From positions 62,001 to 126,000 of IMG/VR virus record IMGVR_UViG_3300031251_000001: 64,000 bases of DNA. One strand, given 5' to 3'. Made by a program: the position numbers and the translations under genes. The notes under the pieces are model-generated. The model had not been told where the DNA came from. It made no database searches and saw only the letters and a list, made by a program, of their open reading frames with translations. Below, in pieces: positions 10,596 through 59,530 of this stretch. The first letter of the stretch is position 1. The number at the start of each line of letters is the position of its first letter.

Positions 10596-10613
10596 CCAAA
10601 ATACGTATTTTGG
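10596..10613. repeat. Dispersed perfect palindrome CCAAAATACGTATTTTGG, copy 1
   Basis: 18-bp perfect inverted repeat between the chaperone stop codon and the tape measure RBS. Confidence 0.95.
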
Positions 10614-19205: not shown

Positions 19206-20061
19206 AGGCGGCCTGCTGTGGTATTTGGACTTTGTAAATGACGTCGTTTACCGGAGCGAGCTTCAGCTCTACGGACCCCAGGATGGGGGTGCCGCGAATC
19301 TCCTTGGTGTTCTGGATCGGGCCAATGTAGTAGCGGTCATCGGTCCGCAGGTTGACCCAGACGTCGTAAGGGTCGACCATGGGAATGAGCAACATCTCCC
19401 CTTTGATCTTAACCAAGGACCAGGGTCCTTTGGTCTCGCCGTCGAGCTGCAGATCCGTCTCTGAGGGGGTAGGACGAATCCAGACGCAGTCGACAGGGTA
19501 GAAGTAGCCGCAGGTAAAACCTGTGCCAACACAGACTTCGCACTGCGGATCTTTGATGTCGCCTGTCTCTTCACTGGTGCAGCGAGGACAAGGGGTGCCG
19601 GTGATCCGCCGCTTGAGCAGGAGCCCAAGCTGGCAGCGTAGGTCACGGCGGAACTTGAGCGTCTCGGTGAAGTAGGTGTGCTGCAGGATTCGCCACGATT
19701 CCGGATCCAGCGTCCCTTCGATCGATGTGGGCTGTGAGTAGTAGACACCCAGGTCGGTGGTGAGGCGGATGCGGTAGTGGGTATAGACGATGTCGCCGCT
19801 GATGTGGTCATCGGGGTCCGTCATGCTGAAGGCGTCAACGACGTCGGAGCCCACGGGCGTCCAGTCGGTGGCGCTGGCATTGCCGGTGTAGCCGATCTGT
19901 ACCTGGAAGGTGTACGGCCCTGGATCGGTGAAATCTGTTCGCAGATCCCAGTAGATCGACGTGCCGCCCCGGTTGATGAACGACACAATGACCCGCTCAA
20001 AGACGGAATCGCAATTCCGGGGGTCACAGGCGACGTCAGTGGTGTTGCAGGTATTGGTCAA
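19183..20061 (-). CDS. Putative head closure / neck protein with Zn-binding motif
   Basis: 292 aa with 'GTPCPRC...CEVCVGTGF..GY'. Located in the neck position. Confidence 0.55.
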   Translation of the reverse strand: MTNTCNTTDVACDPRNCDSVFERVIVSFINRGGTSIYWDLRTDFTDPGPYTFQVQIGYTGNASATDWTPVGSDVVDAFSMTDPDDHISGDIVYTHYRIRLTTDLGVYYSQPTSIEGTLDPESWRILQHTYFTETLKFRRDLRCQLGLLLKRRITGTPCPRCTSEETGDIKDPQCEVCVGTGFTCGYFYPVDCVWIRPTPSETDLQLDGETKGPWSLVKIKGEMLLIPMVDPYDVWVNLRTDDRYYIGPIQNTKEIRGTPILGSVELKLAPVNDVIYKVQIPQQAAYAALLAG

Positions 20062-20064
20062 GGT

Positions 20065-20928
20065 TTAGAGGTACCCGCTGAGCATGCTGTAATCAGAGTT
20101 CACTTCACCCCAGCACTGGTTGAAGCTGTTGGCTGCCTTCTGACCAGCCACGAACTTCTCGTACGCTGCCAGGTCAGTACGTGCCCAGCGATCGTAGGTG
20201 GCATCACGGTTGAAGGGATCGTCCGGGGAGTTCATCTTGTTACGGGCGTAGCCGGCTGCGGCCCCGAGCTGCAGGAGGGCCACGGTGGCACGCAGCCATT
20301 GTTCGCGGTACGGGAAGCTCCTGGTGTGATAGACGTATTGCGGCATCTGCGGTCGCATCTCGTTCCATATCGTCACCGGGCGGGTGTAGGCCATCATGAT
20401 CTCGTCGGCCCCGAACTCGGCCCGCTGCAAGAGCACGTTATCGACTCGCCCGTTGTCGCGGATGGCGTAACGGATTTCGGAGATCGTCGGTGGTCCACGC
20501 CTGGTAGCAAGTTCGTTGGCAAGCATGACCCAGTTGGATCGTTCAATGCTGAGGACGCTGCGGGCGATGCGATTAGGCCGAGTGGTCCCCGTAGGCACGA
20601 TTCCCCATTCAATGCCCCAGATACCGGGGCTGTCGAGGAGGTCGTCCGGCAAGTCGACTGACATAAGTGTGGGCGACGTCCTAGTGGCTGTGACTTTGTA
20701 AATGGGATCGCTGCAGCGGTCGGATGTCTGATCACGGTTGCCGTGGGATAGAGGTTCACGGATGACGGCGTAGATGGTATCGCTGTCCAGCGTGGTAATG
20801 GGGGCGCCGCTGGGGTCGCGAAACGAGAACTGCAAGGTAGCGGAAACACCGCCGTCAATGACGTACGCCCTGGCGCGTTCCAGGGTCTTGCAGCCGTCGA
20901 TAATCGGAATGGTTTCAGGGTAGAGCAT
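20065..20928 (-). CDS. Putative head-tail adaptor / neck protein
   Basis: Start moved to ATG 20928 (GGAG RBS, downstream of a terminator). Contains 'IRYAIRD...N.LL...EF...EI'. Confidence 0.5.
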   Translation of the reverse strand: MLYPETIPIIDGCKTLERARAYVIDGGVSATLQFSFRDPSGAPITTLDSDTIYAVIREPLSHGNRDQTSDRCSDPIYKVTATRTSPTLMSVDLPDDLLDSPGIWGIEWGIVPTGTTRPNRIARSVLSIERSNWVMLANELATRRGPPTISEIRYAIRDNGRVDNVLLQRAEFGADEIMMAYTRPVTIWNEMRPQMPQYVYHTRSFPYREQWLRATVALLQLGAAAGYARNKMNSPDDPFNRDATYDRWARTDLAAYEKFVAGQKAANSFNQCWGEVNSDYSMLSGYL

Positions 20929-20977
20929 GGACTCCCATCCTTGGTCGTCGTGTTTCTCCAGTATACCCTGAGTGACG

Positions 20978-21009
20978 GCTAAAGAAAAAGATCGGGGCCG
21001 AAGCCCCGA
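20978..21009 (-). terminator. Intrinsic terminator with TTTTCTTTAGC tail
   Basis: TCGGGGC-TTCG-GCCCCGA followed by TCTTTTTCTTTAGC. Confidence 0.85.
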
Positions 21010-21019
21010 CCTCGTGAGT

Positions 21020-21577
21020 CTATTTCTTGCATAAGGCGGTGAAGGCATCCTTCTCGTTGTAAGGCTTGCTCTTGTCGGCGATCGCCTTTGTCTCGGCGGT
21101 CGCCAGACCGTCCAGAATGCCCATGATCTCCTCGGTGGTGGAGACCTGGTTGAGGTTGGTGCTGGCGGTGATCAGGTCGGCAATGCGTCGATATGACACG
21201 GCCACCTTAACGGCGTAGTCGTGCTGCTCTTTGCCGGCATATCTCCATTCTTCAATCGCTGCATCGGCCAGGGCCGCTGCATTGATGTACTGCTGGGCTA
21301 CCTTGCCCGACCGCCAGCCCTTCCACCAGATGCTGGAGACCGTCTCCATGTTCCAGAGACGGATCTTGGTAGCGTAACTGGTCAGCTCTCGGCTGGCTTC
21401 CTCTTTGTCGGTGGCGGCGTTGCCCACCCAGATCTTCTGCCCAAACAGACCAAAGCACCAGGTCTTGTCCTCAATCTGAAGATTGCGGAAAGACTCGTGA
21501 CGCTGAGGACCGTAGTCCTGGGCGGAAGCGAGGCCAGTGGAAACCAACACGGCCAGGATTGCGACGAACTTCTTCAT
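21020..21577 (-). CDS. Secreted hypothetical protein (moron-like)
   Basis: Start MKKFVAILAVLVSTGLASA-QD is a classical Sec signal peptide. GGGAG RBS. Confidence 0.75.
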   Translation of the reverse strand: MKKFVAILAVLVSTGLASAQDYGPQRHESFRNLQIEDKTWCFGLFGQKIWVGNAATDKEEASRELTSYATKIRLWNMETVSSIWWKGWRSGKVAQQYINAAALADAAIEEWRYAGKEQHDYAVKVAVSYRRIADLITASTNLNQVSTTEEIMGILDGLATAETKAIADKSKPYNEKDAFTALCKK

Positions 21578-21668
21578 AACTCGGACTCCCTTGAAAGGGT
21601 GAAACGGAACAACCCAACCGACCATCGGCTGGGCTTAGGTGCGTGTTTAACGTCACGCCGGACGAGCC

Positions 21669-22031
21669 TCAGACGACGATACGCGCGTTATCGATCATGC
21701 GACCGGTGAGTGTCGGTTCGTCGTGCTGAGCTTGACGATCGGCCATGGCAGCCCGCAGGTCTGCCGCTGACCATTGTTTGATCCTCTGCTGTGGCTCCCG
21801 GACGGGAGCAAATTGACTGATCCCGCTCGGCTGGTGGGGAGCGTCGATCCAACGGACCACCGGGGAGCCGCCAGGCCCGAAGGCCTCAACGATCCAGGCG
21901 ATCCCCTTGGTCAAGTGACCAGCCAGATTCGCTATGCCTTGAGCCAGCATAACGACTAGGCCGGCCAGAGAGCCGAGGGAGCCCTCAAAGCACTTCATGA
22001 AGATGAATCCAGTCAGTAACCAGAAAGCCAT
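21669..22031 (-). CDS. Membrane hypothetical protein (moron-like)
   Basis: Hydrophobic N-terminal half; lies downstream of the candidate promoter. Confidence 0.55.
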   Translation of the reverse strand: MAFWLLTGFIFMKCFEGSLGSLAGLVVMLAQGIANLAGHLTKGIAWIVEAFGPGGSPVVRWIDAPHQPSGISQFAPVREPQQRIKQWSAADLRAAMADRQAQHDEPTLTGRMIDNARIVV

Positions 22032-22086
22032 GTTAAGCCCCAAAGTAAGAGATGATGTATACCGGTGAGGTATACGATCTTCATGT

Positions 22087-22115
22087 GTTATGACGCAAAT
22101 AGGGCTGTAATTTAG
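22087..22115 (-). promoter_or_regulatory. Candidate promoter CTAAA-N13-TGCGTCATAAC, copy 1
   Basis: The identical bipartite motif with identical spacing recurs at 51672-51700. Confidence 0.55.
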
Positions 22116-22132
22116 TGGTTTTCAGAGCCTTC

Positions 22133-22148
22133 CAAAATACGTATTTTG
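22133..22148. repeat. Dispersed palindrome CAAAATACGTATTTTG, copy 2
   Basis: 16-bp perfect palindrome between a terminator and the candidate promoter. Confidence 0.95.
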
Positions 22149-22153
22149 CAACG

Positions 22154-22181
22154 AAAAAACGGCGAGGAAAACCTCGCCGTT
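22154..22181 (-). terminator. Intrinsic terminator ending the capsid operon
   Basis: AACGGCGAGG-TTTT-CCTCGCCGTT followed by TTTT. Confidence 0.85.
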
Positions 22182-22202
22182 GTCATAGTTAGATCAGCTC
22201 GA

Positions 22203-22817
22203 TTAGGAGGTCGAGTGAGTGCCGATGCCGCTGGCGGTGCCTTGACCTTCGGCTGTGACAGCACGGACTCGGAAGTCGTAGCTGGTGGCAGTCGTGAGGC
22301 CGGTCACCGTGTGGGTCGTACCAGTACCTGCGGAAGGTACCTGGGTCCAGCTGTTGGCGCTGTGGACAGACCATTCCACAATGTAGCTGAGGATCGGTCG
22401 AGTACCGGGGTCGGTAGGAGCCGTCCAGTTGACGACCTGGGTCGTCGCTGCGGTAGTACCGAAGGTCGGCGTACCAGGAGGGCCAGCAACCACTTCTGTG
22501 GAAGGTACTTTGGTTCCGACAGTTCCGCTCGCCGAGGTGATGTCGTAGAGACCACCATTGACGGTATCCAGAACTTGCGGTGCTGGGGGGATAATAGCAA
22601 TGGTGCCAGCGACAACCAATGCTTCGATTTCAGCGCTCATCCGCTTGGGAGAACGACGATTGCCTGCAGAGATGAGATCTCCGATCGACCCGATGTTATC
22701 GAGCATCACGGAGCCATTTGCGGGAATCGTGCCACCCCACGGAGGCAAGAAGGCGATGTATTGATCCTGAGCTGTCAGGTTCTTTACAACCGTCTTCAAG
22801 CTGTTGGCAGTTGACAT
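22203..22817 (-). CDS. Putative capsid-associated protein with C-terminal fibronectin type III domain
   Basis: FN3 signature 'PGTP...VNWTAP...YIVEW...TVTGL...SYDFRVRAV...G'. Confidence 0.75.
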   Translation of the reverse strand: MSTANSLKTVVKNLTAQDQYIAFLPPWGGTIPANGSVMLDNIGSIGDLISAGNRRSPKRMSAEIEALVVAGTIAIIPPAPQVLDTVNGGLYDITSASGTVGTKVPSTEVVAGPPGTPTFGTTAATTQVVNWTAPTDPGTRPILSYIVEWSVHSANSWTQVPSAGTGTTHTVTGLTTATSYDFRVRAVTAEGQGTASGIGTHSTS

Positions 22818-22879
22818 GATCACCTCGTTAATCCGGCCGCGATCGACCGGTGGGATAGTTGGTTATTGAGTACCTGGGG

Positions 22880-23233
22880 TTATTCCTGATCGGCTTCCGC
22901 CTCGAAAGCCACTGCTGCGGCCTCCGAGAGGACAGCATCGCTTGCCAGCTTACTGACCAGTTCGCCGAGGTCGTTTTCCTCGGTGGACTGGGTGGTGAAG
23001 CGGCTGACGATGTCGTTGGCCTGCTTGGCCACGCCGGCGAATCGATCCTGAGTAGCGATCAATCCGTGTTCCTGCGCGGTCACCAGGTCATCAGCCAGTT
23101 TGATCAGGCTGTAGCGTTCCGCATCATTTTCCGGAACCAAGTCGAAAGCGTGCTTCAGCTTATCGAACATCACGTTGTCGCGGAGTTCGGTGAGCTGACC
23201 ACGGGACCTCTCGATCACTTGGATATTGTTCAT
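22880..23233 (-). CDS. Hypothetical head-module protein
   Basis: 117 aa after the major capsid gene, with three K-x-A motifs. Confidence 0.65.
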   Translation of the reverse strand: MNNIQVIERSRGQLTELRDNVMFDKLKHAFDLVPENDAERYSLIKLADDLVTAQEHGLIATQDRFAGVAKQANDIVSRFTTQSTEENDLGELVSKLASDAVLSEAAAVAFEAEADQE

Positions 23234-23302
23234 GTTTGAATCCTTGTGTCTGTAAGTGAGGAAGAGACACCGCTAGCTTACACTAGCGGCACTCCCGTGG
23301 GA

Positions 23303-24256
23303 TTAGTATTGGATGCGGACCAAGCCGTTGGTGTTGGCGATGACAGCACCGAAGCGCTGGTACACCGACATCCTCACGACTTCTTTATGACGCTCAATAA
23401 AGAGCATCGGCTCCGACATGTAGATATGTTTGCCCAGGCAATCTGGCTTCGCAAAATAGTAAGCCTCGCCGGTCTGCACCAGGGCCTTCTTGATGGTGAT
23501 TCGCCAGGTCAAGTCGAACAGGTTGTCCTGAACCTTGAACTCCTGGGAATAGAGACCACGCTTGGCGATCAGTTCAGCGGTGTCACCACCCCATTCCTGA
23601 CGATTCCACTTGGCCACATCGAAGAAGGTGATGTGATTGACCAGGCCCACCTTGGCGGGGAAGCTGGAGGGGGTGTCGGCCAGAGTCTTGAGAGACTCGA
23701 CCAGGGACTCACGGGAGAACCCGCCGCCCACGTCCTTGTACTGGACGGAGCCGGAAGTAGCGACCGTGCTTCCCATCGTGCCGACAGCGAACTGGCAGGC
23801 CGATGTAAAGACGGTATCTTTTTCCGCTGAAAGATCTTTCGTCATGTTATCGACGACGATCTGGCGGATGTCCATGTCGTAGGTGACGAGATCGCCAACG
23901 TCGACTTGGACTTCGGGGGTTTCCACGTGCTGAACGGTGAGGCGGTAGCGATCACCACGCAGGTAGAAGTCATCGGTGCTGGAAGCGAAGGCCATGCTGA
24001 TGGCAGCAGGGCTATCGGGTTCCATGTCGAGCACGTACCCAGGGCGTGGGTCGTCGATCGACTTGTCATACCGACCCTCGGCCTTCTCGCCGGGGATAAT
24101 GTCATCAAGATACCCGGTTTCACGGAGCATCTTGCGGATGAACGATCGGATGCCGTCTTCGGCCTTCTTGGTCCGCATCGGGTCGCCACTGAGGTAGTTA
24201 TCACGCCATTGGGCGTTTGCCTGCCTCATGTCTTCCCGAGTGTATGTCTGCGTCAT
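23303..24256 (-). CDS. Major capsid protein (HK97-fold, inferred)
   Basis: 317 aa at the end of the protease-scaffold-decoration run; 'IRKMLRE.G....I.P' and C-terminal 'FG.VIAN..G'. Confidence 0.75.
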   Translation of the reverse strand: MTQTYTREDMRQANAQWRDNYLSGDPMRTKKAEDGIRSFIRKMLRETGYLDDIIPGEKAEGRYDKSIDDPRPGYVLDMEPDSPAAISMAFASSTDDFYLRGDRYRLTVQHVETPEVQVDVGDLVTYDMDIRQIVVDNMTKDLSAEKDTVFTSACQFAVGTMGSTVATSGSVQYKDVGGGFSRESLVESLKTLADTPSSFPAKVGLVNHITFFDVAKWNRQEWGGDTAELIAKRGLYSQEFKVQDNLFDLTWRITIKKALVQTGEAYYFAKPDCLGKHIYMSEPMLFIERHKEVVRMSVYQRFGAVIANTNGLVRIQY

Positions 24257-24318
24257 GCGTAATTCCTTTTACAGCATTGTGAGTTGAGGGGAAGTCAGTT
24301 CATTCCTGGTACACAGGA

Positions 24319-24873
24319 TTAGGACACAGGCCAGGACAGCCAAGTCCAGAATGCACAGGCTTCCGCCTTGCGCTGAGGATTGAGTTGAATACCACGGCTG
24401 ACGATGCCCACGATGGTGTTGGTGGGGTGAACACCGACCACCAGCTTGCCCACCGTGCCACCTGAAGTGGGGCTGGTGAGCGGAGCATTACGGACATAGT
24501 CACCGAGGTTATCGGTGTCGATTTCCGTGCTGAGCAGCTCGTAACCACCGGTGGCTACCAGGGTGTTGAACACACCAGTAGGGCCGGCAGGGACGAAGGC
24601 TCCCTTGTCAACAGAGGGATCGCCGCCGTAGTTATTCACATCAGCGTCGTACTCATTGTTGCGGAGGAACAGTGGCATCACCTTGGTGTTGCCGACACCA
24701 GGCAGCAGAGTGCCGGTGGATGTTTGGTGACAGACCATGCCTTCATAGGCGATGAGGTCGTCAGGCCAGCTCGCGTCTTGCTTGGCGCGATAATCGAGGC
24801 ACTTCTCGTTGATCTTCCAGTTTTTCAGGGCATCAAGAGTGTGCTCACCGATTCGGCGGGGCTTCGTAATCAT
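24319..24873 (-). CDS. Putative head decoration / cement protein
   Basis: 184 aa, beta-rich, directly upstream of the major capsid gene. Confidence 0.5.
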   Translation of the reverse strand: MITKPRRIGEHTLDALKNWKINEKCLDYRAKQDASWPDDLIAYEGMVCHQTSTGTLLPGVGNTKVMPLFLRNNEYDADVNNYGGDPSVDKGAFVPAGPTGVFNTLVATGGYELLSTEIDTDNLGDYVRNAPLTSPTSGGTVGKLVVGVHPTNTIVGIVSRGIQLNPQRKAEACAFWTWLSWPVS

Positions 24874-26717: not shown

Positions 26718-28124
26718 TCATATATCTTGCGCTATTGTGCCCCGCAGCGTCAACGAGATGTCAACAGCGGAAGGGAGGTAGCGAGATAGTGCAGCGAGGC
26801 GGTAATCCACGTAATCGCTGGCGAGCTTCCTGCCTTCCGCGGTGACAGAAACGGAAGACAGGGTGGGACGACGTGGAGAAACAGACGAGCGGATGGCACG
26901 TGTGGTGTACCCGAACTCAATCCCTAACTCCCCGGCAACCTTGGACACGGTCGACGCCATATTGACGTTTTTGCTGTCAGCCTTGGCCCAGCGATCGGAA
27001 CGTGGATCATAGCTGTCGCACGTGTCGCGGGCTTCTTTGTACATATCGAACAAGCAGGATCGGGCAGCGCCGAGGTGATCGACTCGTCCGGACAAGGCGG
27101 CGAAATCGTTCAGGTTGGCGAAGATGCCACGGTCGGCCAGGGCAGCCAACTGATCAGGAAGATCACGAGCCGTGACGATCTTGCTGAGCTGAGGCAGGTC
27201 ACAATGCCATTGATAGGCGACGTGAGCCGGCATCTCTTCTTCGCTGAAGTCACACAGGAGACTGGCGATCTTGAACCGCATCTTGGATTCGGGACCCGCA
27301 TCGTTGGTCATCACCCAGGAGGGACCACGGATACCCATAAGCAGGGCCAGCTGAGCTGAGCCGATGATGCCGCCATCCGCCCGCTTCTTGGCGAAGTCGG
27401 AGATGGTGGCATAGGAGGTACGTCCAGCAGGGCGGTGGACCGTGGAGATATCCACGAAATAAGAATCAGGATTGAACACGCCCATCTGGACCATGTCATT
27501 CCCGACCTTCACAACCTGGCCAAGGTGCTCGGCACACCCGCCGCCGGGGCAGGTCGCTGCGGTACAGTAGTCCGCAGCTGTCTTGGCCTTGTTCTTGCAG
27601 ACGCCGCAGACGTCATGAGCCACGCGGGCACCCATTGAGATCGGCAGATCGTCACCAGCTTCGAGCCTGTTGATTTCGTAGCTGGCGACTTTACCCTTGT
27701 TCCGATCGGCAGCGGTCTTATTGCTGCTGAGACCGGCGAGCAGCTCGATGCGACCCATGTCGGGGTTGTGCATCGACGCCACGACTCGACCAAAGCTATT
27801 GGTAGGATCTTCGTCGTCGTGATTGCGGTACCAGCGGGCATACTTGACGAAGGTGTGGTGGCGGTCCTCGCATTCCTTGCGGGTCCAGCCATCACCCTTG
27901 CGGTTGAAGCCGGTGGTCTCGTGATCGGCGACCGCCAGGCCGTGCACCAGCAGCTCATCAGGGAAGAGCTTGGTGTTGGCGACCTTTCGCATCAGGTCAT
28001 CACTGGCGCGTTTACGGAACTCGTTCTTATCGTTGCCACGCAGGCCACGACGAGAAACTTTCACGGGGTAGAGCACTTGCTCGCCGTGAAAGTCGAAGTC
28101 CAGCGGGTCGACGATTTTGAACAT
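26718..28124 (-). CDS. Prohead (capsid maturation) protease
   Basis: 'N..GDGW', 'YRNH', 'ISMG' (catalytic Ser candidate), then CxxC and 'FVDIS.V..PA'. Upstream of scaffold and major capsid genes. Confidence 0.7.
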   Translation of the reverse strand: MFKIVDPLDFDFHGEQVLYPVKVSRRGLRGNDKNEFRKRASDDLMRKVANTKLFPDELLVHGLAVADHETTGFNRKGDGWTRKECEDRHHTFVKYARWYRNHDDEDPTNSFGRVVASMHNPDMGRIELLAGLSSNKTAADRNKGKVASYEINRLEAGDDLPISMGARVAHDVCGVCKNKAKTAADYCTAATCPGGGCAEHLGQVVKVGNDMVQMGVFNPDSYFVDISTVHRPAGRTSYATISDFAKKRADGGIIGSAQLALLMGIRGPSWVMTNDAGPESKMRFKIASLLCDFSEEEMPAHVAYQWHCDLPQLSKIVTARDLPDQLAALADRGIFANLNDFAALSGRVDHLGAARSCLFDMYKEARDTCDSYDPRSDRWAKADSKNVNMASTVSKVAGELGIEFGYTTRAIRSSVSPRRPTLSSVSVTAEGRKLASDYVDYRLAALSRYLPSAVDISLTLRGTIAQDI

Positions 28125-29288: not shown

Positions 29289-30492
29289 TGGGCTTCCTTG
29301 CTTCGCGTGGGGGAGAGATGGTGCGCTCGAGGTTACTCATCTCCTGCAGCTCAAAGGGCTGAGGAGCCGATTGCAGGGCACGACGCAGGAGCGGTTTGAG
29401 GGCTCCTGGCATGCGGGCAATGTGCGGGGCGACGGCGGCGATGTCGTTGGTCTTCTGCACAATCTTGTGCAGCGGTACATCACGGATAGGGTCATCCGGA
29501 TCGTTGATCACGTGACTGAGCACCGCCTTGGAGCGGATGCTGTTCAGATCCTGGGTGTGGTTAGGATCGTTGAGGTCGTCGTAGAGCGACTGGACCTGGC
29601 TGCCGTCCGAAGGCTTGCCCATGATGGACTGCCCCAGGGCGGTACCGATACCGATGTTGCCGATGTCACCCAGGCCGGCTTGTTTCTCGAAATCCAAAAT
29701 ACGTATTTTGGCTTGCTCCACCTGGTCGATCGCGGTCTTGACCCGATCCACGTCGGCAATGAGTTCCTTCACATAGGTGAAGGGAGCCGAGTTCAGGTTG
29801 ATCCGTCCGGTGACGACGTGATGATCACTGGCCCGCTTGTCGGTGTGCTCCAGGCCGATGTCGGTAAACAGGCCATCCATATCGAAGTCGGCGTGGACGT
29901 GCTTGCAGACCGCTTCCACGTCGGCCAGGGAGAGTCGAGAGTGTTGTGGCATCTTGAAGTAGTTGGCCAGCTTCCGCATGTTGAGCAGGGCCGTCTCGCG
30001 GGATGATTCGATATCGACGTTGAGCCGTTCGACTGTTTCGCGGTCGGCAGCCAGCTTCTTCATGATGCCGAAGAACGGACGCTCGGCCGGTTTCTCGACG
30101 TCGGAGGCCGCTTTTTGAAAGAAAACGGCCGGTACTTCGGGCAACGGGTCGACATGGAGCTGCAGCGGGGCAAAAGCGTCGCTAGCCACCTTCACCCGCG
30201 CTGCAGGTGTACTCTTGGGCTTTTCGCCGTAGACGTGGTCGATCGCTTTGTCGATGTCGGCCAGGGGCATGCTGGCCAGTTTGTCGGCGGCGGTCTTGCC
30301 TCGCTGGAATTGATCGACCTGGGCACCGGAGTTATAGATGCTGCCGGCCACGCGGATGAAGCCGGGCTGGAGGTCGAGCTCCTGGGCCGTCTTGACCAAG
30401 GCGTCCGTAGGGTGGCAATCAGCGTCGACGTGGTAACCGATGCGGTCCACGGCTCGTACCAACTTTTGTTCGTCGGCGCTAGTTAGCTTCAC
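29281..30492 (-). CDS. Putative internal virion protein
   Basis: 403 aa with about 10 K-x-A motifs. Confidence 0.6.
   Translation of the reverse strand: MKLTSADEQKLVRAVDRIGYHVDADCHPTDALVKTAQELDLQPGFIRVAGSIYNSGAQVDQFQRGKTAADKLASMPLADIDKAIDHVYGEKPKSTPAARVKVASDAFAPLQLHVDPLPEVPAVFFQKAASDVEKPAERPFFGIMKKLAADRETVERLNVDIESSRETALLNMRKLANYFKMPQHSRLSLADVEAVCKHVHADFDMDGLFTDIGLEHTDKRASDHHVVTGRINLNSAPFTYVKELIADVDRVKTAIDQVEQAKIRILDFEKQAGLGDIGNIGIGTALGQSIMGKPSDGSQVQSLYDDLNDPNHTQDLNSIRSKAVLSHVINDPDDPIRDVPLHKIVQKTNDIAAVAPHIARMPGALKPLLRRALQSAPQPFELQEMSNLERTISPPREARKPNE
29694..29711. repeat. Dispersed palindrome CCAAAATACGTATTTTGG, copy 3 (intragenic)
   Basis: 18-bp palindrome encoding AKIRILD with AT-rich codons. 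Confidence 0.95.
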
Positions 30493-34993: not shown

Positions 34994-37900
34994 CTAACTC
35001 TTGACGGCCTTCTTTTCGTCTTCGATCTTGGTGTTCAACTCTTGCTGTCGAGCCAACAGTTTCGGGTCGTTCGGGGTCGCGGCCAACTGTTTGTCCAGTT
35101 GAGCCCGTTCTGAGTGATAGCTCTTCATCTTAGCCAGGGCATGGAATTGACCCCATTCGAGGTTTTCCGGAGCCTGGTTGAGACGTTGTACGTACTCCTG
35201 GCTGTTAGGAGATTTCTCCACATCGGCGTCCCGCAGCAGGGCCTTGCTGAGGGTGGAAGCACTGAAGGAGGAAGGATTCGTCAGCTCCTGCTCGGTACTC
35301 TTGACGACCTTGTTGATGTCGATGAGCTGACCCTGCAGCTTGGCGTACTCGGCCTGGGGCAGTGGGTTCTGACCGGAGTCGGACATCTGCAGCTGGGAGC
35401 GGATGTCAGCTCGCTGCTGCAGCTTGTCCCCGACTTCCTTCTCCACGTCGGCGAAATCGTTAGGCCGGGCCTTGGTCGCCAGGTTGGTGCGGAACTCCGA
35501 CAACTCCATGTCAGCCTTGCCGCGATTGTTCCGCATCACCTGTTTCTGGGCTTCAGCGACGTCGGGGTTGTTCAGAGCCTCATCGGTCTTACGCTCAAAG
35601 TATTGCTTGGAGAAGTTAGTGCTGTCTTGCACGCCTTTGACGTACTGATCATGTTGACCGCTGATCTGGGCAGCAGCACGGGCTGAGGTGACCGGAGTCA
35701 TGGCGGCGCCAAGCATACCCTTGGCTCGTGTTAATCCGGAGTCAGGCGTACCCAGAGCAGGGCTGCTCTGTTCGAGCTGCTGGGCACGGTTATTGATGTC
35801 TTCTTGGCTGACGGTACCCAGCAGGTTCTTGCCAGCGTCCACGAGAGCAGGAGCAGCAATCATGCCGGCACCGAGCGGAGCTACACCGGAGATAGCACCC
35901 TCCAGGGTGTTCTCAACGACGTCTTTGGTCTCAAGCGGATTGCCGGCAGCCAAGTCGTAGATCATGCCTGCCGTCGAGCCGCCGACGCCGCCCATTGCTC
36001 CACCCCGGATCATGCTCTTGGGACCGAGGGTCTTACCCAGGGAACGACCTACCGCGACCTGGGTGCCGTTCTGGGCAATCTGGTTACCGATCCAATTGGT
36101 GGTAGAGTTGCCTTCCGGAGCCTGGGCAAAATCAGCCGGCGGTTGCTCCGCTGCCGACTCGTGCTCAGGGTACTGCTCAATTTGCTGTTGTGGTTGCTGA
36201 CGTGGAGGTCCCCATTGGTGCTGGACGCCATATTGTTCCAGACCGGGTTGCTGATATTGAGGTCGCATTTGCGGAGGCAGTTGCGGAGCAGGGAACGGAG
36301 ACTGGCCTTGCTGCGGTTGCTGGGCCTGGTGAGCCGCCATACCCGCCATCGGCGTGTATTGGTTGCTACTGTTGAAGCCGGGCTTCGGCATGTTGTTCTT
36401 GGGAGCACCAGCGCTGTAGGGATTGTGCTGTCCCTGCCCTGGCGGCTTTTCCCAGGGGACTTCGGGTGGCTTCACCGGATCCAGCGGGCTGATCTGGCTT
36501 CGGCTTGGATCGGGCTCGAAGTCGGCGGTCTTGTCGAACGCTTTATCGAAGGAGTCTTTGTAGCCCGGCGTGCAGTTCTTACACTCACTCGACGGGATGT
36601 CATAGACTGGCACCGCACCCATCGATCGAGGGCCGTGGCAGGGTTTACGACAGCCCTCGCAGTAATGGTACTGAGGGCGTGGCCCCTTGTACCAATGCTC
36701 TTTGCCGCCGTGTGTCACGAGATAGTGAGTATCTGTGTCACGAGAAGTATCAGGATCGTGTGTGTCACTGGCTACCTTGGGCAACGGTTTGCCTTCAGGT
36801 GGGAGCTCGACCGGCTTGCTCTTGTGTTGGAAGTAGCCTTCGCGGCCGAAGTCAGCAGCATGGGCCAGGCTCGGCACAAAACTGGTACCGGTTCGGTCGC
36901 TGACCGCACCCCGGTGAACCGAAGCCAGGAGACCCTTGCTCAGGTTCGAGCCGTACATGCGGGTGATCGGGTCGGGATCGTGCAGCAGGTTATCACTGGC
37001 TCGCACCATCTCGAAGTTGAACGGTGGTGGCTGGTCGTGGACGTGGACCTCATCGAGTTTGAGATCGTCCATCTCTTTGGCCATCTTGGGCGTCACCTTC
37101 ACACCGATCGTGTGGTGCAGGATCGGCGATTCCAGGTACTTCCCGATGGCCTTCTTGGGGTGGAGACGTTGCCCGCCCTCACGGGGTTCGTACGCCGCCT
37201 CGATCATGTGGTAAGGGACGACATCGTCCGGGATGTAGTCACCGACAAAGTCGTTGAGCCTGACGTGATTGATGAGGCCACGGCTGATGAGTTCCAGGTT
37301 ACGGCGATCGGCTCGCATGTTCTGGCTCTTGGCCAGATCCATCATCGTGTTGGTCCAGTAGCGACGGCCCTCACCGATGCCTTTGTGCATCGTGATCTTT
37401 TCGGGGTTGGGGATGCCGTTGGAGAGCGTATCGCCGGCCTCGACGGAATCACCAACCTTGACCGTGGCTGCTTGCTCCGGAGCTACGTAGTGGCGATTGG
37501 AGCCGACCCAGACGTAGCTACCGCCGGCAGGTGCCTTCTGGATACGTTGCACCGTGCCGTCAGCGACAGCGTGAGCAGCTCCGCCCTGGAAGGTGCTCGG
37601 GATCTGTGCCATCTGCTCGAACGACTTAAAGCCGGAGACAGCGACTTGACCGGCCACGCCGCCGGTGTGCTTAGAGTTGAGACCCATCTGGGTGACGGGC
37701 TCACTGACACCCTGGGAGGTGGTCATCCCTGGCATGTCGCCACGCTGCACCAGGTGCCCGTTTTCATCGAGACCTACGTCGTAGGCGTAGACGCCACCGT
37801 CAGGGCTGCTGCGGGCGATGGGGGAGCGGACAACCAGCTTCTTATGCCCGCCACGGTCGAGAGAGTCCAGGATCTTCTGCGTGATGACCGTATTGGCTTT

Positions 37901-38695
37901 GAACGGGCCGGTATCGCGGGCGAGGAGTGCCCCCACGCTTCCTTTATCGGATACGTCAACGGGAAGGCCCCGAAGGTACTGCTTGCGATCTTTAACGTGT
38001 TCGTCATCATCGGACACGTCGGTATCGACGACCACATTCCGGTGGGAGACTTGGTTAAGTAGTTTGTTGTAGTATCCAGCATTGGCCACCCCCAGCTTGA
38101 CGTCCACGACTCCCTTGCGGGCACCGAAGAGGCTGGCGTGATATTCAGGGTAAGACAACCCTTGTGAGTAGCTACGGTACACCGGCAGGAGCAGCGGGTT
38201 GTCCTGGTTATCGTTGTACTGCAGATCGCCGCCGACCAGGCTGTTGTAGTTGGCTTTGTTGCCGCGAGCTCCGGAGTGGATCTGCATCGCCAGAGGGTTC
38301 TTGGCGGCAATACCTTCATCGTAGACCTCGCTGTTCTGCTGTTGCTGAGCAGCCGAGGTGAGTTCGATAATCTTCTTCTTGCGTGTTTCGGGGGATAGGC
38401 CGGCGTGAAGTACCCGTTGGATCTGGGTATCGAGCTTGGCTTGGATACGCTGGGCCGTGGGGCTCTTGCGCATGTGCTCCAAGTCGAAGGAGTAACCTCC
38501 GGTGGACTGGGCGTGGAAGCGACCGATGTCCGAGAGTTTCTTGCTGACGTCGACGTACTGGTCGGGGTGCCGCTGAGCGACCTCCCGTAGTAACGTCTCA
38601 AGGCCCTTCTTGTCGAGCACCCGCGTGTAATCGCGGAGATCGGCAGGAAGGGCCATGTTAGCCTTGAGCTGGCCAGCGGTTGTTCTGATTGGCAT
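34994..38695 (-). CDS. Phage RNA polymerase beta'-like subunit, C-terminal part, with long non-RNAP extension
   Basis: 'SGARGN', 'GARKGVVD', bridge helix 'AGYYNKLL' and trigger loop 'SEPVTQMGLNSKHTGG'. The last ~590 aa are unrelated to RNAP. Confidence 0.85.
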   Translation of the reverse strand: MPIRTTAGQLKANMALPADLRDYTRVLDKKGLETLLREVAQRHPDQYVDVSKKLSDIGRFHAQSTGGYSFDLEHMRKSPTAQRIQAKLDTQIQRVLHAGLSPETRKKKIIELTSAAQQQQNSEVYDEGIAAKNPLAMQIHSGARGNKANYNSLVGGDLQYNDNQDNPLLLPVYRSYSQGLSYPEYHASLFGARKGVVDVKLGVANAGYYNKLLNQVSHRNVVVDTDVSDDDEHVKDRKQYLRGLPVDVSDKGSVGALLARDTGPFKANTVITQKILDSLDRGGHKKLVVRSPIARSSPDGGVYAYDVGLDENGHLVQRGDMPGMTTSQGVSEPVTQMGLNSKHTGGVAGQVAVSGFKSFEQMAQIPSTFQGGAAHAVADGTVQRIQKAPAGGSYVWVGSNRHYVAPEQAATVKVGDSVEAGDTLSNGIPNPEKITMHKGIGEGRRYWTNTMMDLAKSQNMRADRRNLELISRGLINHVRLNDFVGDYIPDDVVPYHMIEAAYEPREGGQRLHPKKAIGKYLESPILHHTIGVKVTPKMAKEMDDLKLDEVHVHDQPPPFNFEMVRASDNLLHDPDPITRMYGSNLSKGLLASVHRGAVSDRTGTSFVPSLAHAADFGREGYFQHKSKPVELPPEGKPLPKVASDTHDPDTSRDTDTHYLVTHGGKEHWYKGPRPQYHYCEGCRKPCHGPRSMGAVPVYDIPSSECKNCTPGYKDSFDKAFDKTADFEPDPSRSQISPLDPVKPPEVPWEKPPGQGQHNPYSAGAPKNNMPKPGFNSSNQYTPMAGMAAHQAQQPQQGQSPFPAPQLPPQMRPQYQQPGLEQYGVQHQWGPPRQQPQQQIEQYPEHESAAEQPPADFAQAPEGNSTTNWIGNQIAQNGTQVAVGRSLGKTLGPKSMIRGGAMGGVGGSTAGMIYDLAAGNPLETKDVVENTLEGAISGVAPLGAGMIAAPALVDAGKNLLGTVSQEDINNRAQQLEQSSPALGTPDSGLTRAKGMLGAAMTPVTSARAAAQISGQHDQYVKGVQDSTNFSKQYFERKTDEALNNPDVAEAQKQVMRNNRGKADMELSEFRTNLATKARPNDFADVEKEVGDKLQQRADIRSQLQMSDSGQNPLPQAEYAKLQGQLIDINKVVKSTEQELTNPSSFSASTLSKALLRDADVEKSPNSQEYVQRLNQAPENLEWGQFHALAKMKSYHSERAQLDKQLAATPNDPKLLARQQELNTKIEDEKKAVKS

Positions 38696-38715
38696 CCTTG
38701 CCTCAGTCCCTGCTG

Positions 38716-39576
38716 CTATTGGTTATCGAGGTCCTCGTGATTGAGATCCTCGTTCTTGGGCTCTTCATGAACCTCTTTCACTTTACCATGATCGTCCGTT
38801 TCGGACTTCTCTTCGGTATGAGTGTGCTCCGCTGTGGTGTGTTCGGTCGTGCCGCCGACAGGGACCGTAGCGGTTGCATGTTTTGCAACTTCTGATTCAA
38901 TTTTTGAAACAGTTGGTGCAACGTGAGGAGCGGGGGCAGGGGCAGGTTTGGTGGCAACCGGCTTGACCGGTTCAGGACCCTTGTGCGGAGCCGCTACAGG
39001 TGCCACGACTGGCTTGGGTGTCGTGTGCACTGCTGCTGGTGGCTGCTCGTGCTCGGTGATTGTTTCCGGGCAGTTGGGAGCATTCACGGGACGAACGATA
39101 GCCCAGCCTTCGGGGATCTCGGCTTCACTGACCAGGTAATCACACAGGGTGACCAGTGCTTCTTCCTGGCCCTGGGGTACACGAATGATCGTGCGGTTCT
39201 GATCGGCTGCCGCAGCAGTCACGATGGCGTGCTGCCAGGCGTCGACAGGGAGATGGATCAGAGTGATGTGGGGTGATGCGGTACCACCCTTGGAGTTGCG
39301 TGGCACCACTCGCGGGGGCTGGGCTGCAGGGAGCTTCTTGGCGTTGGCGTAATAAGCATCAGGAGCCGAAGTGAGGTCCTGGGGGTTACGGCCGCGAATC
39401 GGGGTTCCTTGTTGTCGTTCTGCGTTCATGCGAGCACCATCGAATATGTCGACGGCCATGGCGCCTGCTGAGGTGCCCTGACCGGTGCGACGGGGTTGAG
39501 GCTTCTTGGGACTTCCGTAGTAAGCGTGTTCAGGGGATTCAATACCGCCATTGAGATCGCGGTGTGGTAGGGACAT
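38716..39576 (-). CDS. Hypothetical protein
   Basis: 286 aa with a disordered Pro/Glu/His-rich C-terminus. Confidence 0.65.
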   Translation of the reverse strand: MSLPHRDLNGGIESPEHAYYGSPKKPQPRRTGQGTSAGAMAVDIFDGARMNAERQQGTPIRGRNPQDLTSAPDAYYANAKKLPAAQPPRVVPRNSKGGTASPHITLIHLPVDAWQHAIVTAAAADQNRTIIRVPQGQEEALVTLCDYLVSEAEIPEGWAIVRPVNAPNCPETITEHEQPPAAVHTTPKPVVAPVAAPHKGPEPVKPVATKPAPAPAPHVAPTVSKIESEVAKHATATVPVGGTTEHTTAEHTHTEEKSETDDHGKVKEVHEEPKNEDLNHEDLDNQ

Positions 39577-39578
39577 GA

Positions 39579-39803
39579 CTAACCTCCCAGTCGGATGAGT
39601 TGGGCTGGCTTTTCCCCGAGCCGACTGAGTACCGCAGGGAAATCGGGTTCACCGTGTTTACTGACAACGATCTGGCGACCTACGCTGTAGCAGACCACCA
39701 GGGCGTTGCCGTCAATGTCACGGATGACCACCTGCTCGATAGGAATCACGTCGCGTTTAGCTCCGCGACCAATGCCTCCGGCAGTGACGATATCCGCAAA
39801 CAT
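39579..39803 (-). CDS. Small hypothetical protein
   Basis: 74 aa, tightly packed, GGAG RBS. Confidence 0.6.
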   Translation of the reverse strand: MFADIVTAGGIGRGAKRDVIPIEQVVIRDIDGNALVVCYSVGRQIVVSKHGEPDFPAVLSRLGEKPAQLIRLGG

Positions 39804-39804
39804 A

Positions 39805-40632: not shown

Positions 40633-40634
40633 GA

Positions 40635-50323: not shown

Positions 50324-50343
50324 ACGAGTCCCATTGTAACTCG

Positions 50344-51250: not shown

Positions 51251-51291
51251 GCTAAAGAAAAACACGCCGGCCCGTACGAGGGGCCGGCGTG
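51251..51291 (-). terminator. Intrinsic terminator with TTTTCTTTAGC tail
   Basis: 11-bp stem CACGCCGGCCC/GGGCCGGCGTG then TTTTTCTTTAGC. Confidence 0.85.
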
Positions 51292-51295
51292 AGAA

Positions 51296-51598
51296 TCAGG
51301 CAGGAACGAGGAGTTCATGCTCTTCCGTGATACGTTCTCTCACGCTGTGCACCAGAGCCATGTGCTCCATGTGTTCTTCGTAGAGATCGGCCAGGTCAAG
51401 CCAGTTGGGTTCATCGTGGTTACGACGAATGTCCTTGTCGGTGGGTTCCGCCATCGCCACACAGGCGTCAAGGCAGGCGTCACAGAGCTGGTTAGCTTTG
51501 CGACACGCCTTGCAGAGAGGAGCTCGGCAACTGCCGCACTTGGCGGTAGTACGCTTGGACTCGCAACAAGTGCAGCGTTTCTTGAGCGGTTCAGACAT
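51296..51598 (-). CDS. Small Cys-rich (Zn-finger-like) protein
   Basis: Four CxxC pairs; AAGGAG RBS. Confidence 0.7.
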   Translation of the reverse strand: MSEPLKKRCTCCESKRTTAKCGSCRAPLCKACRKANQLCDACLDACVAMAEPTDKDIRRNHDEPNWLDLADLYEEHMEHMALVHSVRERITEEHELLVPA

Positions 51599-51625
51599 GA
51601 CTCGGACTCCTTGAGAGGGGACATG

Positions 51626-51654
51626 AAAAAACCCGCTGAAACCAATCAGCGGGT
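51626..51654 (-). terminator. Intrinsic terminator / attenuator
   Basis: ACCCGCTGA-N6-TCAGCGGGT followed by TTTTT. Confidence 0.75.
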
Positions 51655-51671
51655 AACAATACCGTTCAATA

Positions 51672-51700
51672 GTTATGACGCATTTACGCCTCTTCTTTAG
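51672..51700 (-). promoter_or_regulatory. Candidate promoter CTAAA-N13-TGCGTCATAAC, copy 2
   Basis: Matches 22087-22115 in both boxes and in spacing. Confidence 0.5.
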
Positions 51701-59493: not shown

Positions 59494-59530
59494 GCTAAAG
59501 AAAAGAATCCCGGCCGCGATGGCCGGGATT
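59494..59530. terminator. Terminator between convergent genes, with TTTTCTTTAGC tail on the minus strand
   Basis: 10-bp stem AATCCCGGCC/GGCCGGGATT. Confidence 0.85.

What the first reader, a model, noticed from the sequence alone, without database searches (positions are those of the whole stretch)
21020..22181. Moron-like cassette between head and neck genes shares a regulatory grammar with the 51.3-51.7 kb cassette
Seen: both loci have CTAAA-N13-TGCGTCATAAC (22087-22115; 51672-51700). Both have a hairpin with a U-rich tail before the gene (21612-21634; 51631-51654). The leaders are near-identical, CCCT(T/C)TCAAGG(G)AGTCCGAGT(T/C)ATG (21575-21599; 51596-51619), and both end in a terminator with the TTTTCTTTAGC tail. 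The cargo is unrelated: a membrane plus a secreted protein here, a Cys-rich protein there. Inference: a standardised expression cassette for swappable accessory genes, possibly under antitermination control. The envelope-targeted cargo may act in superinfection exclusion or host modification.
Basis: partly seen in the sequence, partly recalled or inferred. Interest (0 to 1): 0.6.

Follow-up and report, generated by a model that had tools for sequence, protein, structure and literature searches.

The report
Phage sigma-28-type promoter cassettes
The two loci belong to a set of five small, self-contained transcription units in a 214-kb soil phage, each opened by the same flagellar-sigma-type promoter (probably read by the phage's own FliA-like sigma factor) and mostly closed by the same kind of terminator, and their gene content differs between related phages.

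Summary
The window is part of a 214,229-bp rhizosphere jumbo phage. CTAAA-N13-TGCGTCATAAC (plus TGAA 3 nt on) occurs exactly five times genome-wide. All five are on the coding strand and lie in intergenic space (at locus B the CTAAA box overlaps the end of the upstream gene). They match 19-20 of 20 positions, and nothing scores 15-18.

A related phage (40-80% protein identity) keeps the motif at three orthologous sites, although the spacer and flanks have diverged.

The box sequence and geometry match sigma-28 (FliA) promoters. The phage encodes a FliA/WhiG-like sigma whose -35-reading helix (SESRVSQ) is identical to that of Pseudomonas FliA.

Four of the five units end in hairpin + TTTT(T/C)CTTTAGC (p about 0.001). 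Cargo varies between relatives. The secreted protein at locus A is absent from the relative. The relative has an extra membrane protein at locus B, behind the same leader.

The closest analogues are T4-type PeSL cassettes and morons. Three claims remain untested: antitermination, cargo function, and "head/neck" flanks.

The parts
22158..22181 (-). Intrinsic terminator (hairpin plus U tail) that closes the upstream fn3-domain gene (22203-22817) and insulates locus A.
   Evidence: -19.9 kcal/mol, z -6.4; an equivalent hairpin lies at the same place in the relative
22133..22148 (.). Perfect 16-bp palindrome CAAAATACGTATTTTG. It belongs to a 23-copy genome-wide family that usually ends 10-25 nt before start codons. 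It is probably the phage's main promoter or operator.
   Evidence: conserved 16/16 in the relative at the orthologous site, but 6 nt rather than 17 nt from the CTAAA box
22080..22115 (-). Sigma-28-type promoter of locus A: -35 CTAAA (22115-22111), 13-nt spacer, TGCGTCATAAC (22097-22087), conserved TGAA (22083-22080). Predicted start about 22080.
   Evidence: geometry compared with sigma-28; ortholog in the relative has 2 substitutions
22057..22075 (-). 5'-UTR stem-loop of locus A. The relative has a stem-loop at the same position with a different sequence.
   Evidence: (folds 8 and 9)
21669..22031 (-). ORF1 (P0001), 120 aa, small membrane protein. A 118-aa ortholog sits at the same position in the relative.
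   Evidence: 22% identity, E 5e-8; N- and C-termini conserved; no Pfam or PHROG hit
21601..21635 (-). Internal hairpin with a weak U tail between ORF1 and ORF2. Possibly an attenuator.
   Evidence: -18.4 kcal/mol
21578..21599 (-). Leader and ribosome-binding region of ORF2, near-identical to the leader at 51599-51619.
21020..21577 (-). ORF2 (P0002), 185 aa: signal-peptide-like N-terminus, then a predicted beta-hairpin and four-helix bundle. Absent at this locus in the relative. It belongs to a small phage-only family.
20978..21013 (-). Terminator hairpin plus TTTTTCTTTAGC tail that closes locus A.
   Evidence: the tail motif is kept before the orthologous downstream gene in two other phages
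51665..51700 (-). Sigma-28-type promoter of locus B. The CTAAA box (51700-51696) lies inside the last codons of gene 51684-52109. TGCGTCATAAC is at 51682-51672 and TGAA at 51668-51665. Predicted start about 51665.
   Evidence: a diverged copy (CGAGTCATAAG) lies at the orthologous site in the relative
51625..51654 (-). Canonical terminator-like hairpin plus six U, lying about +12 to +41 of the predicted transcript.
   Evidence: -17 kcal/mol, z -5.4; the relative has two hairpins at the same place
51599..51619 (-). Leader and ribosome-binding region of locus B. In the relative the same leader heads a different first gene.
51296..51598 (-). P0003, 100 aa, Cys-rich (B-box/zinc-finger-like as a lead only). 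The relative has a 104-aa ortholog.
   Evidence: (39% identity, E 9e-14)
51251..51291 (-). Terminator hairpin plus TTTTTCTTTAGC tail that closes locus B.
   Evidence: in the relative the stem sequence differs but the 16-nt tail is identical
59494..59530 (-). Another hairpin plus TTTTCTTTAGC terminator. It closes gene 59555-60499, which is headed by the palindrome and not by the sigma-28-type box.

Best explanation
Locus A and locus B are two of five autonomous transcription units in a 214-kb jumbo phage.

Promoter. Each unit opens with a bipartite sigma-28 (FliA)-class promoter: -35 CTAAA, a fixed 19-nt gap, then ATAA within TGCGTCATAAC. The predicted start is the second A of the conserved TGAA. 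I infer that the phage's own FliA/WhiG-like sigma factor (genome 26732-27358) reads these promoters, together with either host core RNA polymerase or the phage's bacterial-type beta/beta' enzyme (window 34994-45659).

Transcript. It carries a 5' stem-loop and one or two small genes, each preceded by a hairpin and a ribosome-binding leader. It ends at an intrinsic terminator whose U tract runs into a conserved ...CTTTAGC.

Evolution. The regulatory ends stay fixed while the genes between them are gained or lost. The units therefore behave as standard expression slots for accessory genes, much like PeSL cassettes of T4-type phages. Recombination at the repeated hairpin/leader/tail sequences is the likely, but inferred, shuffling mechanism.

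Shown: motif copy number, strand and position, conservation in a relative, the match to sigma-28 geometry, the nature of the sigma gene, the cargo differences, and the hairpins.

Inferred: that the motif fires, which sigma and which polymerase use it, its timing, and the recombination mechanism.
For: Copy number and placement:
- There are five copies at 19-20 of 20 positions. All are on the coding strand, in intergenic space (at locus B the -35 box overlaps the last codons of the upstream gene), 44-90 nt before a start codon. No intermediate matches exist.

Conservation in a relative with 40-80% protein identity:
- Unit 2: the boxes and the downstream ATGAACGG are fully conserved while the 13-nt spacer has diverged.
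- Locus A: conserved with 2 substitutions.
- Locus B: conserved with 3 substitutions.
- The spacing is invariant in all 8 sites.

Match to sigma-28:
- Published P. aeruginosa elements are (-36)TCTAAAG(-30) and (-15)GCCGATAA(-8) (PMC12784957). That gives the same CTAAA core and the same 19-nt distance to ATAA.
- The phage sigma's best NCBIfam model is FliA_WhiG (4e-25), and its best solved-structure matches are FliA and WhiG.
- Its recognition helix SESRVSQ is identical to Pa FliA, including the residues aligned to S224 and Q228, which contact -35 bases.

Transcribed leader:
- The 5'-UTR stem-loop at locus A is kept in the relative with a different sequence.

Terminator pairing:
- Of 27 intergenic terminator-like sites, 5 carry the CTTTAGC tail. 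Four of those close sigma-28-type units (hypergeometric p about 0.0014).

Cargo plasticity:
- P0002 is absent at locus A in the relative.
- At locus B the relative has an extra 155-aa membrane protein, P0010, behind the conserved leader.
- P0002 homologues lie in different contexts in other phage contigs, each between hairpin/T-tail signals.
Against: - There are no transcript data. All four sequencing runs that hold the phage are DNA.
- The -10 region differs from canonical sigma-28 at the key CGA (GTCATAA versus CCGATAA). The sigma scores below the FliA_WhiG curated cut-off (88.9 versus 189.6 bits), and its region 2 aligns poorly with FliA.
- Only five promoters is a small regulon for a dedicated sigma.
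- At locus B a canonical terminator lies right after the predicted start, which is awkward for a simple promoter-to-gene unit.
- The direction of the indels (gain or loss) cannot be polarised with two genomes.
- Cassette genes show no foreign composition.
- The shared leader occurs in only two units, loosely three.
- It is unknown whether the relative encodes the sigma.
Confidence: 0.6

Rival explanations
1. The motif is a promoter, but the host's flagellar sigma factor (FliA) or another host sigma reads it. The phage would then tie these accessory genes to the host's motility or late-flagellar state. The phage sigma would serve other promoters, for example the palindrome class.
For: - The -35 core and the spacing are those of bacterial sigma-28 promoters.
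- Single 20/20 matches exist in two bacterial contigs, L054 and L070.
Against: - All eight phage sites deviate from the canonical sigma-28 -10 box (GCCGATAA): six read GTCATAA and one GGCATAA. No canonical GCCGATAA-type site exists in the phage.
- The two bacterial hits are single copies with no phage homology. About one hit is expected by chance in about 1e12 positions, and L070 has no gene nearby.
- The phage carries a sigma with the matching -35-reading helix.
Confidence: 0.15
2. The motif is not a promoter. It is a binding site for a phage regulator, or an RNA-level signal (a processing site, or a leaderless mini-ORF starting at the conserved ATGAACGG = Met-Asn-Gly). Transcription would come from elsewhere, for example the palindrome at locus A or read-through.
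For: - The conserved ATGAACGG downstream of the box opens 4-23-codon mini-ORFs in all five copies, TTG-initiated at locus B (my reading of the sequences).
- Locus A also has the palindrome upstream.
- At locus B a terminator follows immediately.
Against: - Two conserved boxes separated by a fixed-length, non-conserved spacer is promoter architecture, and the match to sigma-28 is specific.
- The relative's locus A and locus B copies lack the ATG.
- Four of the five units have no palindrome.
Confidence: 0.12
3. The shared sequences are only relics of a few internal duplications of one regulatory region, with no common present function. The cargo differences are ordinary deletions unrelated to the motifs.
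For: - The leader is shared by only two units.
- The hairpin stems have unrelated sequences.
- Cassette genes have native composition.
Against: - The motif is maintained at three orthologous sites across 20-60% protein divergence, while neighbouring non-coding sequence is unalignable.
- The terminator tail is conserved while stems are replaced.
- The promoter-tail association is significant.
Confidence: 0.08

Closest known systems
PeSL (promoter-early stem-loop) cassettes of T4-type phages (Arbiol et al. 2010, PMC2839356; Comeau et al. 2014, PMC4122927)
   Same: - Repeated composite promoter, stem-loop and Shine-Dalgarno modules flank small ORFan genes.
- Indels between related phages map to these modules.
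- Units are transcriptionally insulated.
- Stem-loops take variable positions relative to the promoter.
   Different: - PeSL promoters are strong host sigma-70 early promoters, dozens per genome, clustered in hyperplastic regions.
- Here there are five sigma-28-type promoters scattered over 214 kb, one of them inside a conserved block of otherwise unannotated genes next to an fn3-domain protein.
- The phage has its own RNA polymerase and sigma factor.
- There is a distinct conserved 3' tail.
- Recombination and mini-circles were not tested here.
Morons of lambdoid phages (promoter + gene + terminator inserted between two genes; described in PMC2839356 and from my own knowledge of Juhala/Hendrix work)
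   Same: Each is an autonomous promoter-gene-terminator unit sitting between conserved genes. P0002 is present in one phage and absent in its relative.
   Different: - Morons do not share standard regulatory ends and often have deviant composition.
- Here the ends are standardised.
- The promoter and first gene of locus A are ancestral.
- Composition is native.
Bacterial sigma-28 (FliA/WhiG/SigD) promoters, TCTAAAG ... GCCGATAA (PMC12784957)
   Same: - Identical CTAAA core at -35.
- The same 19-nt distance to ATAA.
- G/C-rich bases just upstream of the -10 box.
- The cognate-type sigma encoded in cis has an identical recognition helix.
   Different: - The -10 box reads GTCATAA instead of CCGATAA.
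- The initiation region (A)TGAACGG is conserved.
- The regulon consists of phage accessory genes rather than flagellar genes.
Phage-encoded sigma factor regulons (SPO1 gp28 and gp33/34, T4 gp55; my knowledge) and phage Arash, which packages beta, beta' and a sigma in virions (PMC10585845)
   Same: A phage sigma redirects transcription to phage-specific promoters. The RNA polymerase beta-beta' fusion of this phage is 30% identical over 85% of its length to Arash gp206.
   Different: - Those sigmas drive whole temporal classes. Here only five small units carry the motif.
- This sigma has no detectable similarity to any phage record in the collection.
- A survey of 224 jumbo phages found sigma factors only in the group that lacks its own RNA polymerase, and none in the main polymerase-encoding group (PMC7824862).

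Membership tests
Sigma-28 (FliA)-class promoter | -35 element TAAA / TCTAAAG | tested here: met
   CTAAA is invariant in all 5 copies and in 3 orthologous copies of the relative; consensus from PMC12784957
Sigma-28 (FliA)-class promoter | Spacing between -35 and -10: 19 nt from CTAAA to ATAA | tested here: met
   13 + 6 nt in all 8 sites, against positions -31 to -11 in the P. aeruginosa fliC promoter
Sigma-28 (FliA)-class promoter | -10 element GCCGATAA | tested here: not met
   The sites read GCGTCATAA (also GCGGCATAA and GAGTCATAA). Only ATAA and the flanking G/C are shared. No canonical site exists in the genome.
Sigma-28 (FliA)-class promoter | Transcription start 7-8 nt after the -10 box, dependent on the sigma factor | not testable with these tools
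   No RNA run holds the phage
FliA/WhiG family sigma factor (the phage protein, genome 26732-27358) | Score above the family cut-off; regions 2, 3 and 4 | tested here: inconclusive
   TIGR02479 is the best hit (4e-25, 88.9 bits) but lies below the cut-off of 189.6. Pfam r2 and r4_2 are above their cut-offs. The generic sigma-70/ECF superfamily model is also above its cut-off.
FliA/WhiG family sigma factor (the phage protein, genome 26732-27358) | Region 4.2 recognition helix with the -35-contacting Ser and Gln | tested here: met
   SESRVSQ is identical to Pa FliA. Residues aligned to S224 and Q228 are conserved.
Moron | Own promoter and terminator around a gene that related phages lack at that site | tested here: inconclusive
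   The feature holds for P0002, though it has no promoter of its own. It does not hold for the promoter + P0001 or for P0003, which are present in the relative.
Moron | Deviant nucleotide composition (frequent, but not obligatory) | tested here: not met
   GC, GC3 and codon score are within or above the genome norm
PeSL-type regulatory cassette | Repeated conserved promoter + stem-loop + SD module at ORFan borders | tested here: met
PeSL-type regulatory cassette | Indels between relatives bounded by the modules | tested here: met
   P0002 at locus A and P0010 at locus B
PeSL-type regulatory cassette | Host sigma-70 early promoter; recombination between modules giving mini-circles | tested here: not met
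   The promoter is not sigma-70-like (one search found none). Recombination cannot be tested with these tools.
Intrinsic terminator | GC-rich hairpin directly followed by a U tract | tested here: met
   20978-21013, 51251-51291, 51625-51654 and 22158-22181. The hairpin at 21611-21635 has only a weak tail.

The most novel reading that the evidence does not exclude
A jumbo phage with its own bacterial-type RNA polymerase keeps a FliA-like sigma factor dedicated to a handful of plug-in slots for accessory genes. The standard sigma-28-type promoter, hairpin/leader and 'U-run + AGC' tail would act both as expression signals and as recombination linkers that let genes move between slots and between phages. 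Terminators placed just after promoters, as at locus B and at the palindrome-headed unit at genome 165,2xx, might act as a filter that only one of the two polymerases, or an antiterminated complex, can pass.
Probability: 0.25. Interest if true: 0.7.

Novelty: new variant of a known kind. Interest (0 to 1): 0.5.

Why it matters
- It gives a concrete, testable promoter-sigma pair for an uncultured lineage of jumbo phages that encode both a bacterial-type RNA polymerase and a sigma factor. A survey of 224 jumbo phages found sigma factors only in the group that lacks its own RNA polymerase (PMC7824862).
- It extends the idea of standardised regulatory cassettes that shuffle accessory genes (PeSLs) beyond T4-type phages and beyond host sigma-70 promoters.
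- The five promoters, the lineage-wide terminator tail and the 23-copy palindrome together provide a first transcription map for annotating such phages.
- The promoter-sigma pair could serve as orthogonal expression parts if validated.

Tried and rejected
- Relatives in IMG/VR. Exact-pattern scans for the promoter motif and for the palindrome gave only single-copy chance hits. Protein-seeded scans with three phage proteins found nothing. blastn against GenBank phages found nothing.
- Bacterial 20/20 motif hits L054 (a 265-kb soil contig with GGDEF, NtrC-like and BioD genes) and L070 (a Gemmatales MAG). I considered these as evidence for a host-type promoter. I set them aside as likely chance: each is a single copy, about one is expected by chance, there is no phage homology, and L070 has no gene nearby. 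The whole L054 record could not be searched.
- ECF-sigma reading of the motif (AAC/CGTC type). This was my first idea after the Pfam r2 + r4_2 hits. I replaced it with the FliA-type reading after the NCBIfam, PDB and consensus comparison.
- Host sigma-70 reading. The box sequences are a poor match, and the promoter scan found none in 18-26 kb.
- Cargo function.
  - P0001-P0003 and the genes of the other three units have no Pfam or PHROG hits.
  - The word-index search found only P0002 itself.
  - Atlas look-alikes score below 0.9.
  - The P0002 model (pLDDT 77.6) has no PDB fold match at E <= 0.001.
  - P0002 and P0010 are unrelated.
- Flank identity ('head/neck'). PHROGs and PDB sequence searches gave nothing except fn3.
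- Expression. No RNA runs hold the phage. Contigs from four rhizosphere DNA runs laid on 19500-24500 (5,001 letters, within the operators' limit) show the same phage with no variants.
- Rfam and tRNA scans of the window found nothing.
Full report
**Context.** The window is bases 62,001-126,000 of a 214,229-bp IMG/VR virus record that is rated complete. The phage was assembled from a rhizosphere metagenome and is present at low depth in three other rhizosphere runs. My own gene call gives about 283 genes, nearly all on the minus strand, at 57.6% GC. The phage encodes one bacterial-type multisubunit RNA polymerase. Its beta-beta'(N) fusion is at window 40635-45659 and beta'(C) is at 34994-38695. 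The fusion protein is 30% identical over 85% of its length to the beta subunit of Salmonella phage Arash and to Vibrio phages D181, D148 and D69. In Arash, beta, beta' and a sigma factor were found in virions (PMC10585845).

On the minus strand, CTAAA-N13-TGCGTCATAAC lies at 22115-22087 and 51700-51672. Hairpins lie at 21635-21611 and 51654-51631. The near-identical leaders end at the ATGs at 21577 and 51598. Both units end in hairpin + TTTTTCTTTAGC.

- The leader pair shares an 11-mer found nowhere else in the genome.
- Its alignment score ranks at the 99.97th percentile of all gene-upstream pairs.
- Part of that score is the commonest Shine-Dalgarno word in this phage.
- A looser third copy of 'hairpin-U tract-leader' sits at genome 165,163-165,245.

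**Genome-wide picture.** Three further copies exist, at genome 6511, 47344 and 161418.

- With 20 specified positions (CTAAA, TGCGTCATAAC, TGAA), five sites score 19-20, none score 15-18, and shuffled genomes top out at 14-15.
- Even the minimal pattern TAAA-N19-ATAA adds only one further site on the coding strand and two on the opposite strand, close to the shuffle expectation of about 0.9 per strand.
- All five lie on the coding strand, in intergenic space 44-90 nt upstream of a start codon.
- At locus B the -35 box overlaps the last codons of the upstream gene.

**Conservation in relatives.** A metagenome-wide scan for the 20-position pattern returned the phage itself, two bacterial contigs, and two 3-kb contigs of a related phage. 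Protein searches with flanking genes then gave longer contigs of the same relative, L062 and L068, whose proteins are 37-80% identical to ours in perfect synteny.

- Unit 2: both boxes and the following ATGAACGG are 100% conserved, while the 13-nt spacer has diverged. The 74-aa protein is only 44% identical.
- Locus A: the relative has CTAAA-N13-TGCGGCATAAA, followed by a 5' stem-loop at the same position with a different sequence.
- Locus B: it has CTAAA-N13-CGAGTCATAAG, again overlapping the stop codon of the orthologous upstream gene.

Conserved boxes at fixed spacing around a free spacer are the signature of a bipartite promoter under selection.

**Which polymerase specificity.** The genome encodes one sigma-70-family protein (genome 26732-27358, 208 aa; Pfam regions 2 and 4_2).

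- Its best NCBIfam model is FliA_WhiG (4e-25, below the curated cut-off).
- Its best solved-structure relatives are FliA and WhiG.
- The published P. aeruginosa sigma-28 elements are (-36)TCTAAAG(-30) and (-15)GCCGATAA(-8) (PMC12784957).
- The phage motif has the same CTAAA core and the same 19-nt distance from CTAAA to ATAA.
- The -10 box differs: GTCATAA rather than CCGATAA.
- The sigma's region 4.2 helix reads SESRVSQ, identical to Pa FliA. This includes the positions aligned to S224 and Q228, which contact -35 bases. Region 2 aligns poorly.

An identical -35 reader with an identical -35 box, and a divergent region 2 with a divergent -10 box, make a coherent pair. I therefore infer that the phage sigma reads these five promoters, with starts near 22080 and 51665. 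This is inference, because no RNA data exist.

The two bacterial 20/20 hits are single-copy and lack phage homology, and about one such hit is expected by chance. I do not count them as evidence for a host promoter class.

**The 3' ends.** A simple scan finds 27 intergenic terminator-like sites on the coding strand, and five carry the ...CTTTAGC tail.

- Four of those five close sigma-28-type units 1-4 (hypergeometric p about 0.0014).
- The fifth closes gene 59555-60499, which is headed by the palindrome instead.
- Unit 5 has a weaker variant tail.
- At locus B the relative has a different stem sequence but an identical 16-nt tail.
- At locus A the tail motif is retained 13-14 nt before the downstream gene's ATG in two other phages. 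In the one relative where the upstream sequence is available (L062), it is predicted to pair with an upstream purine run.
- Distant phages that carry P0002 homologues also end genes with hairpin + T-run + AGC.

The tail is therefore a lineage-wide signal, not a private mark of these cassettes. Its role beyond the U tract is unexplained. The 5' (G)CTAAA and 3' TTTAG(C) are inverted repeats of each other, which I note without interpretation.

**Cargo plasticity.**

- Locus A in the relative reads, in order: terminator, palindrome, promoter, a 118-aa ortholog of P0001, a hairpin, 24 nt, TTTTCTTTAGC, then the ortholog of 20065-20928. There is no P0002 gene.
- Locus B in the relative reads, in order: promoter, two hairpins, a leader very like ours, an extra 155-aa one-TM protein (P0010) with no homologue in our phage, a hairpin, the P0003 ortholog, then the terminator. 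The leader therefore stays with the slot and not with the gene.
- P0002 has only four distant homologues among 1.84 billion representatives (31-37% identity). All have a signal-like N-terminus. They lie in different neighbourhoods of other phage contigs.
- The P0002 model (pLDDT 77.6) is a beta-hairpin plus four-helix bundle with no significant PDB match.
- Cassette genes have native GC and codon use. P0002 is about 1.5 SD above the mean codon score. This argues against recent foreign origin, and gain versus loss cannot be polarised.
- The cargo of the five units is mixed: a 388-aa soluble protein; a 74-aa protein; a membrane plus a secreted protein; a Cys-rich protein; and a 70-aa C-terminal-TM protein. 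A common envelope role is therefore not supported.

A perfect palindrome, CAAAATACGTATTTTG, lies at 22148-22133, between the upstream terminator and the promoter. It has 23 copies genome-wide, most ending 10-25 nt before a start codon. It is conserved at two orthologous sites in the relative, but at a different distance from the CTAAA box (17 versus 6 nt). It is therefore an independent element, probably the phage's main promoter or an operator. Locus A may thus have tandem promoters.

**Open points.**

- The terminator at 51654-51625 lies about +12 to +41 of the predicted transcript, and its position is conserved in the relative. Attenuation, antitermination, polymerase-selective read-through or 5'-end stabilisation are all possible and were not tested.
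- 'Head and neck' could not be verified. The flanks are a conserved block of unannotated genes plus one fn3-domain protein.

**Comparison with known systems.** The units work like PeSL cassettes of T4-type phages: a repeated promoter/stem-loop/SD module at ORFan borders, with indels at the modules (PMC2839356, PMC4122927). They differ from PeSLs in three ways.

- The promoter class differs: sigma-28-type with a phage sigma, rather than host sigma-70.
- Their number and distribution differ.
- They have a conserved 3' tail.

They resemble morons only loosely.

**Verdict.** This is a new variant of a known kind, of moderate interest.

Noticed in passing
window 10598-10611, 22134-22147, 29696-29709, 47948-47961, 60524-60537 (and 18 more sites in the genome): A perfect palindrome, (C)AAAATACGTATTTT(G), occurs 23 times in the 214-kb genome. 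Most copies end 10-25 nt before a start codon. It is conserved at two orthologous sites in the relative. It is likely the phage's main promoter or an operator for a dimeric regulator.
   Followed up: partly
window about 60622-60681 (-); nine more copies at genome about 5.1, 147.0, 182.3, 183.2, 186.3, 202.8, 207.9, 208.9 and 213.8 kb: A roughly 65-nt repeated intergenic element lies on the coding strand. It has three stems supported by covarying positions, a conserved CCUGGUGG loop and a CACAAC tail (alifold -30.6). There is no Rfam match in the window. Function unknown.
   Followed up: partly
window 50088-50343 (-): A 256-nt gap without an ORF lies between gene 50344-51183 and the InPase-like gene. 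It shows blocks of strong conservation against the relative (L068 6879-7099), so it may be a non-coding RNA. Another TTTTCTTTAGC copy (50357-50347) sits just upstream, at the end of the coding region and without an adjacent hairpin.
   Followed up: partly
genome 26732-27358 (-), outside the window (L026:1135-1761): A FliA/WhiG-like sigma factor gene in a phage that also encodes its own beta/beta' RNA polymerase. It has no similarity to any GenBank phage record at E 1e-5.
   Followed up: yes
window 34994-38695 and 40635-45659 (-): The RNA polymerase is encoded as a 1674-aa beta + beta'(N-terminal) fusion and a 1233-aa beta'(C-terminal) protein. These genes are embedded among large unannotated genes.
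   Followed up: partly
window 51213-51241 (-): A sigma-70-like TTGCAG-N17-TATAGT lies just after the locus B terminator and ahead of gene 50344-51183. The relative has TTGTGT-N16-TATACT at the equivalent place. Other sigma-70-like boxes are seen elsewhere in the genome, for example genome 50509-50568.
   Followed up: no
L062 1493-4030 compared with window 26718-28124: The relative's ortholog of the 468-aa protein is 845 aa and carries Hint and LAGLIDADG hits, which suggests an intein insertion that our phage lacks.
   Followed up: no
window 59555-60499 (-), 60962-63010 (-), 48954-50087 (-): Three genes of note. The first contains an RHR...S....S.R-type motif reminiscent of ThyX; this is from memory and was not tested by HMM. 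The second is a C-5 cytosine DNA methylase (Pfam). The third is an InPase-family pyrophosphatase (Pfam).
   Followed up: no
the five promoter copies (window 22084-22080 and 51668-51665, and genome 6498, 47331, 161405): The conserved (A)TGAACGG after the box opens tiny ORFs (Met-Asn-Gly... or Met-Lys-Ile...; TTG-initiated at locus B) of 4-23 codons in our phage. The ATG is not kept in the relative's locus A and locus B copies.
   Followed up: no
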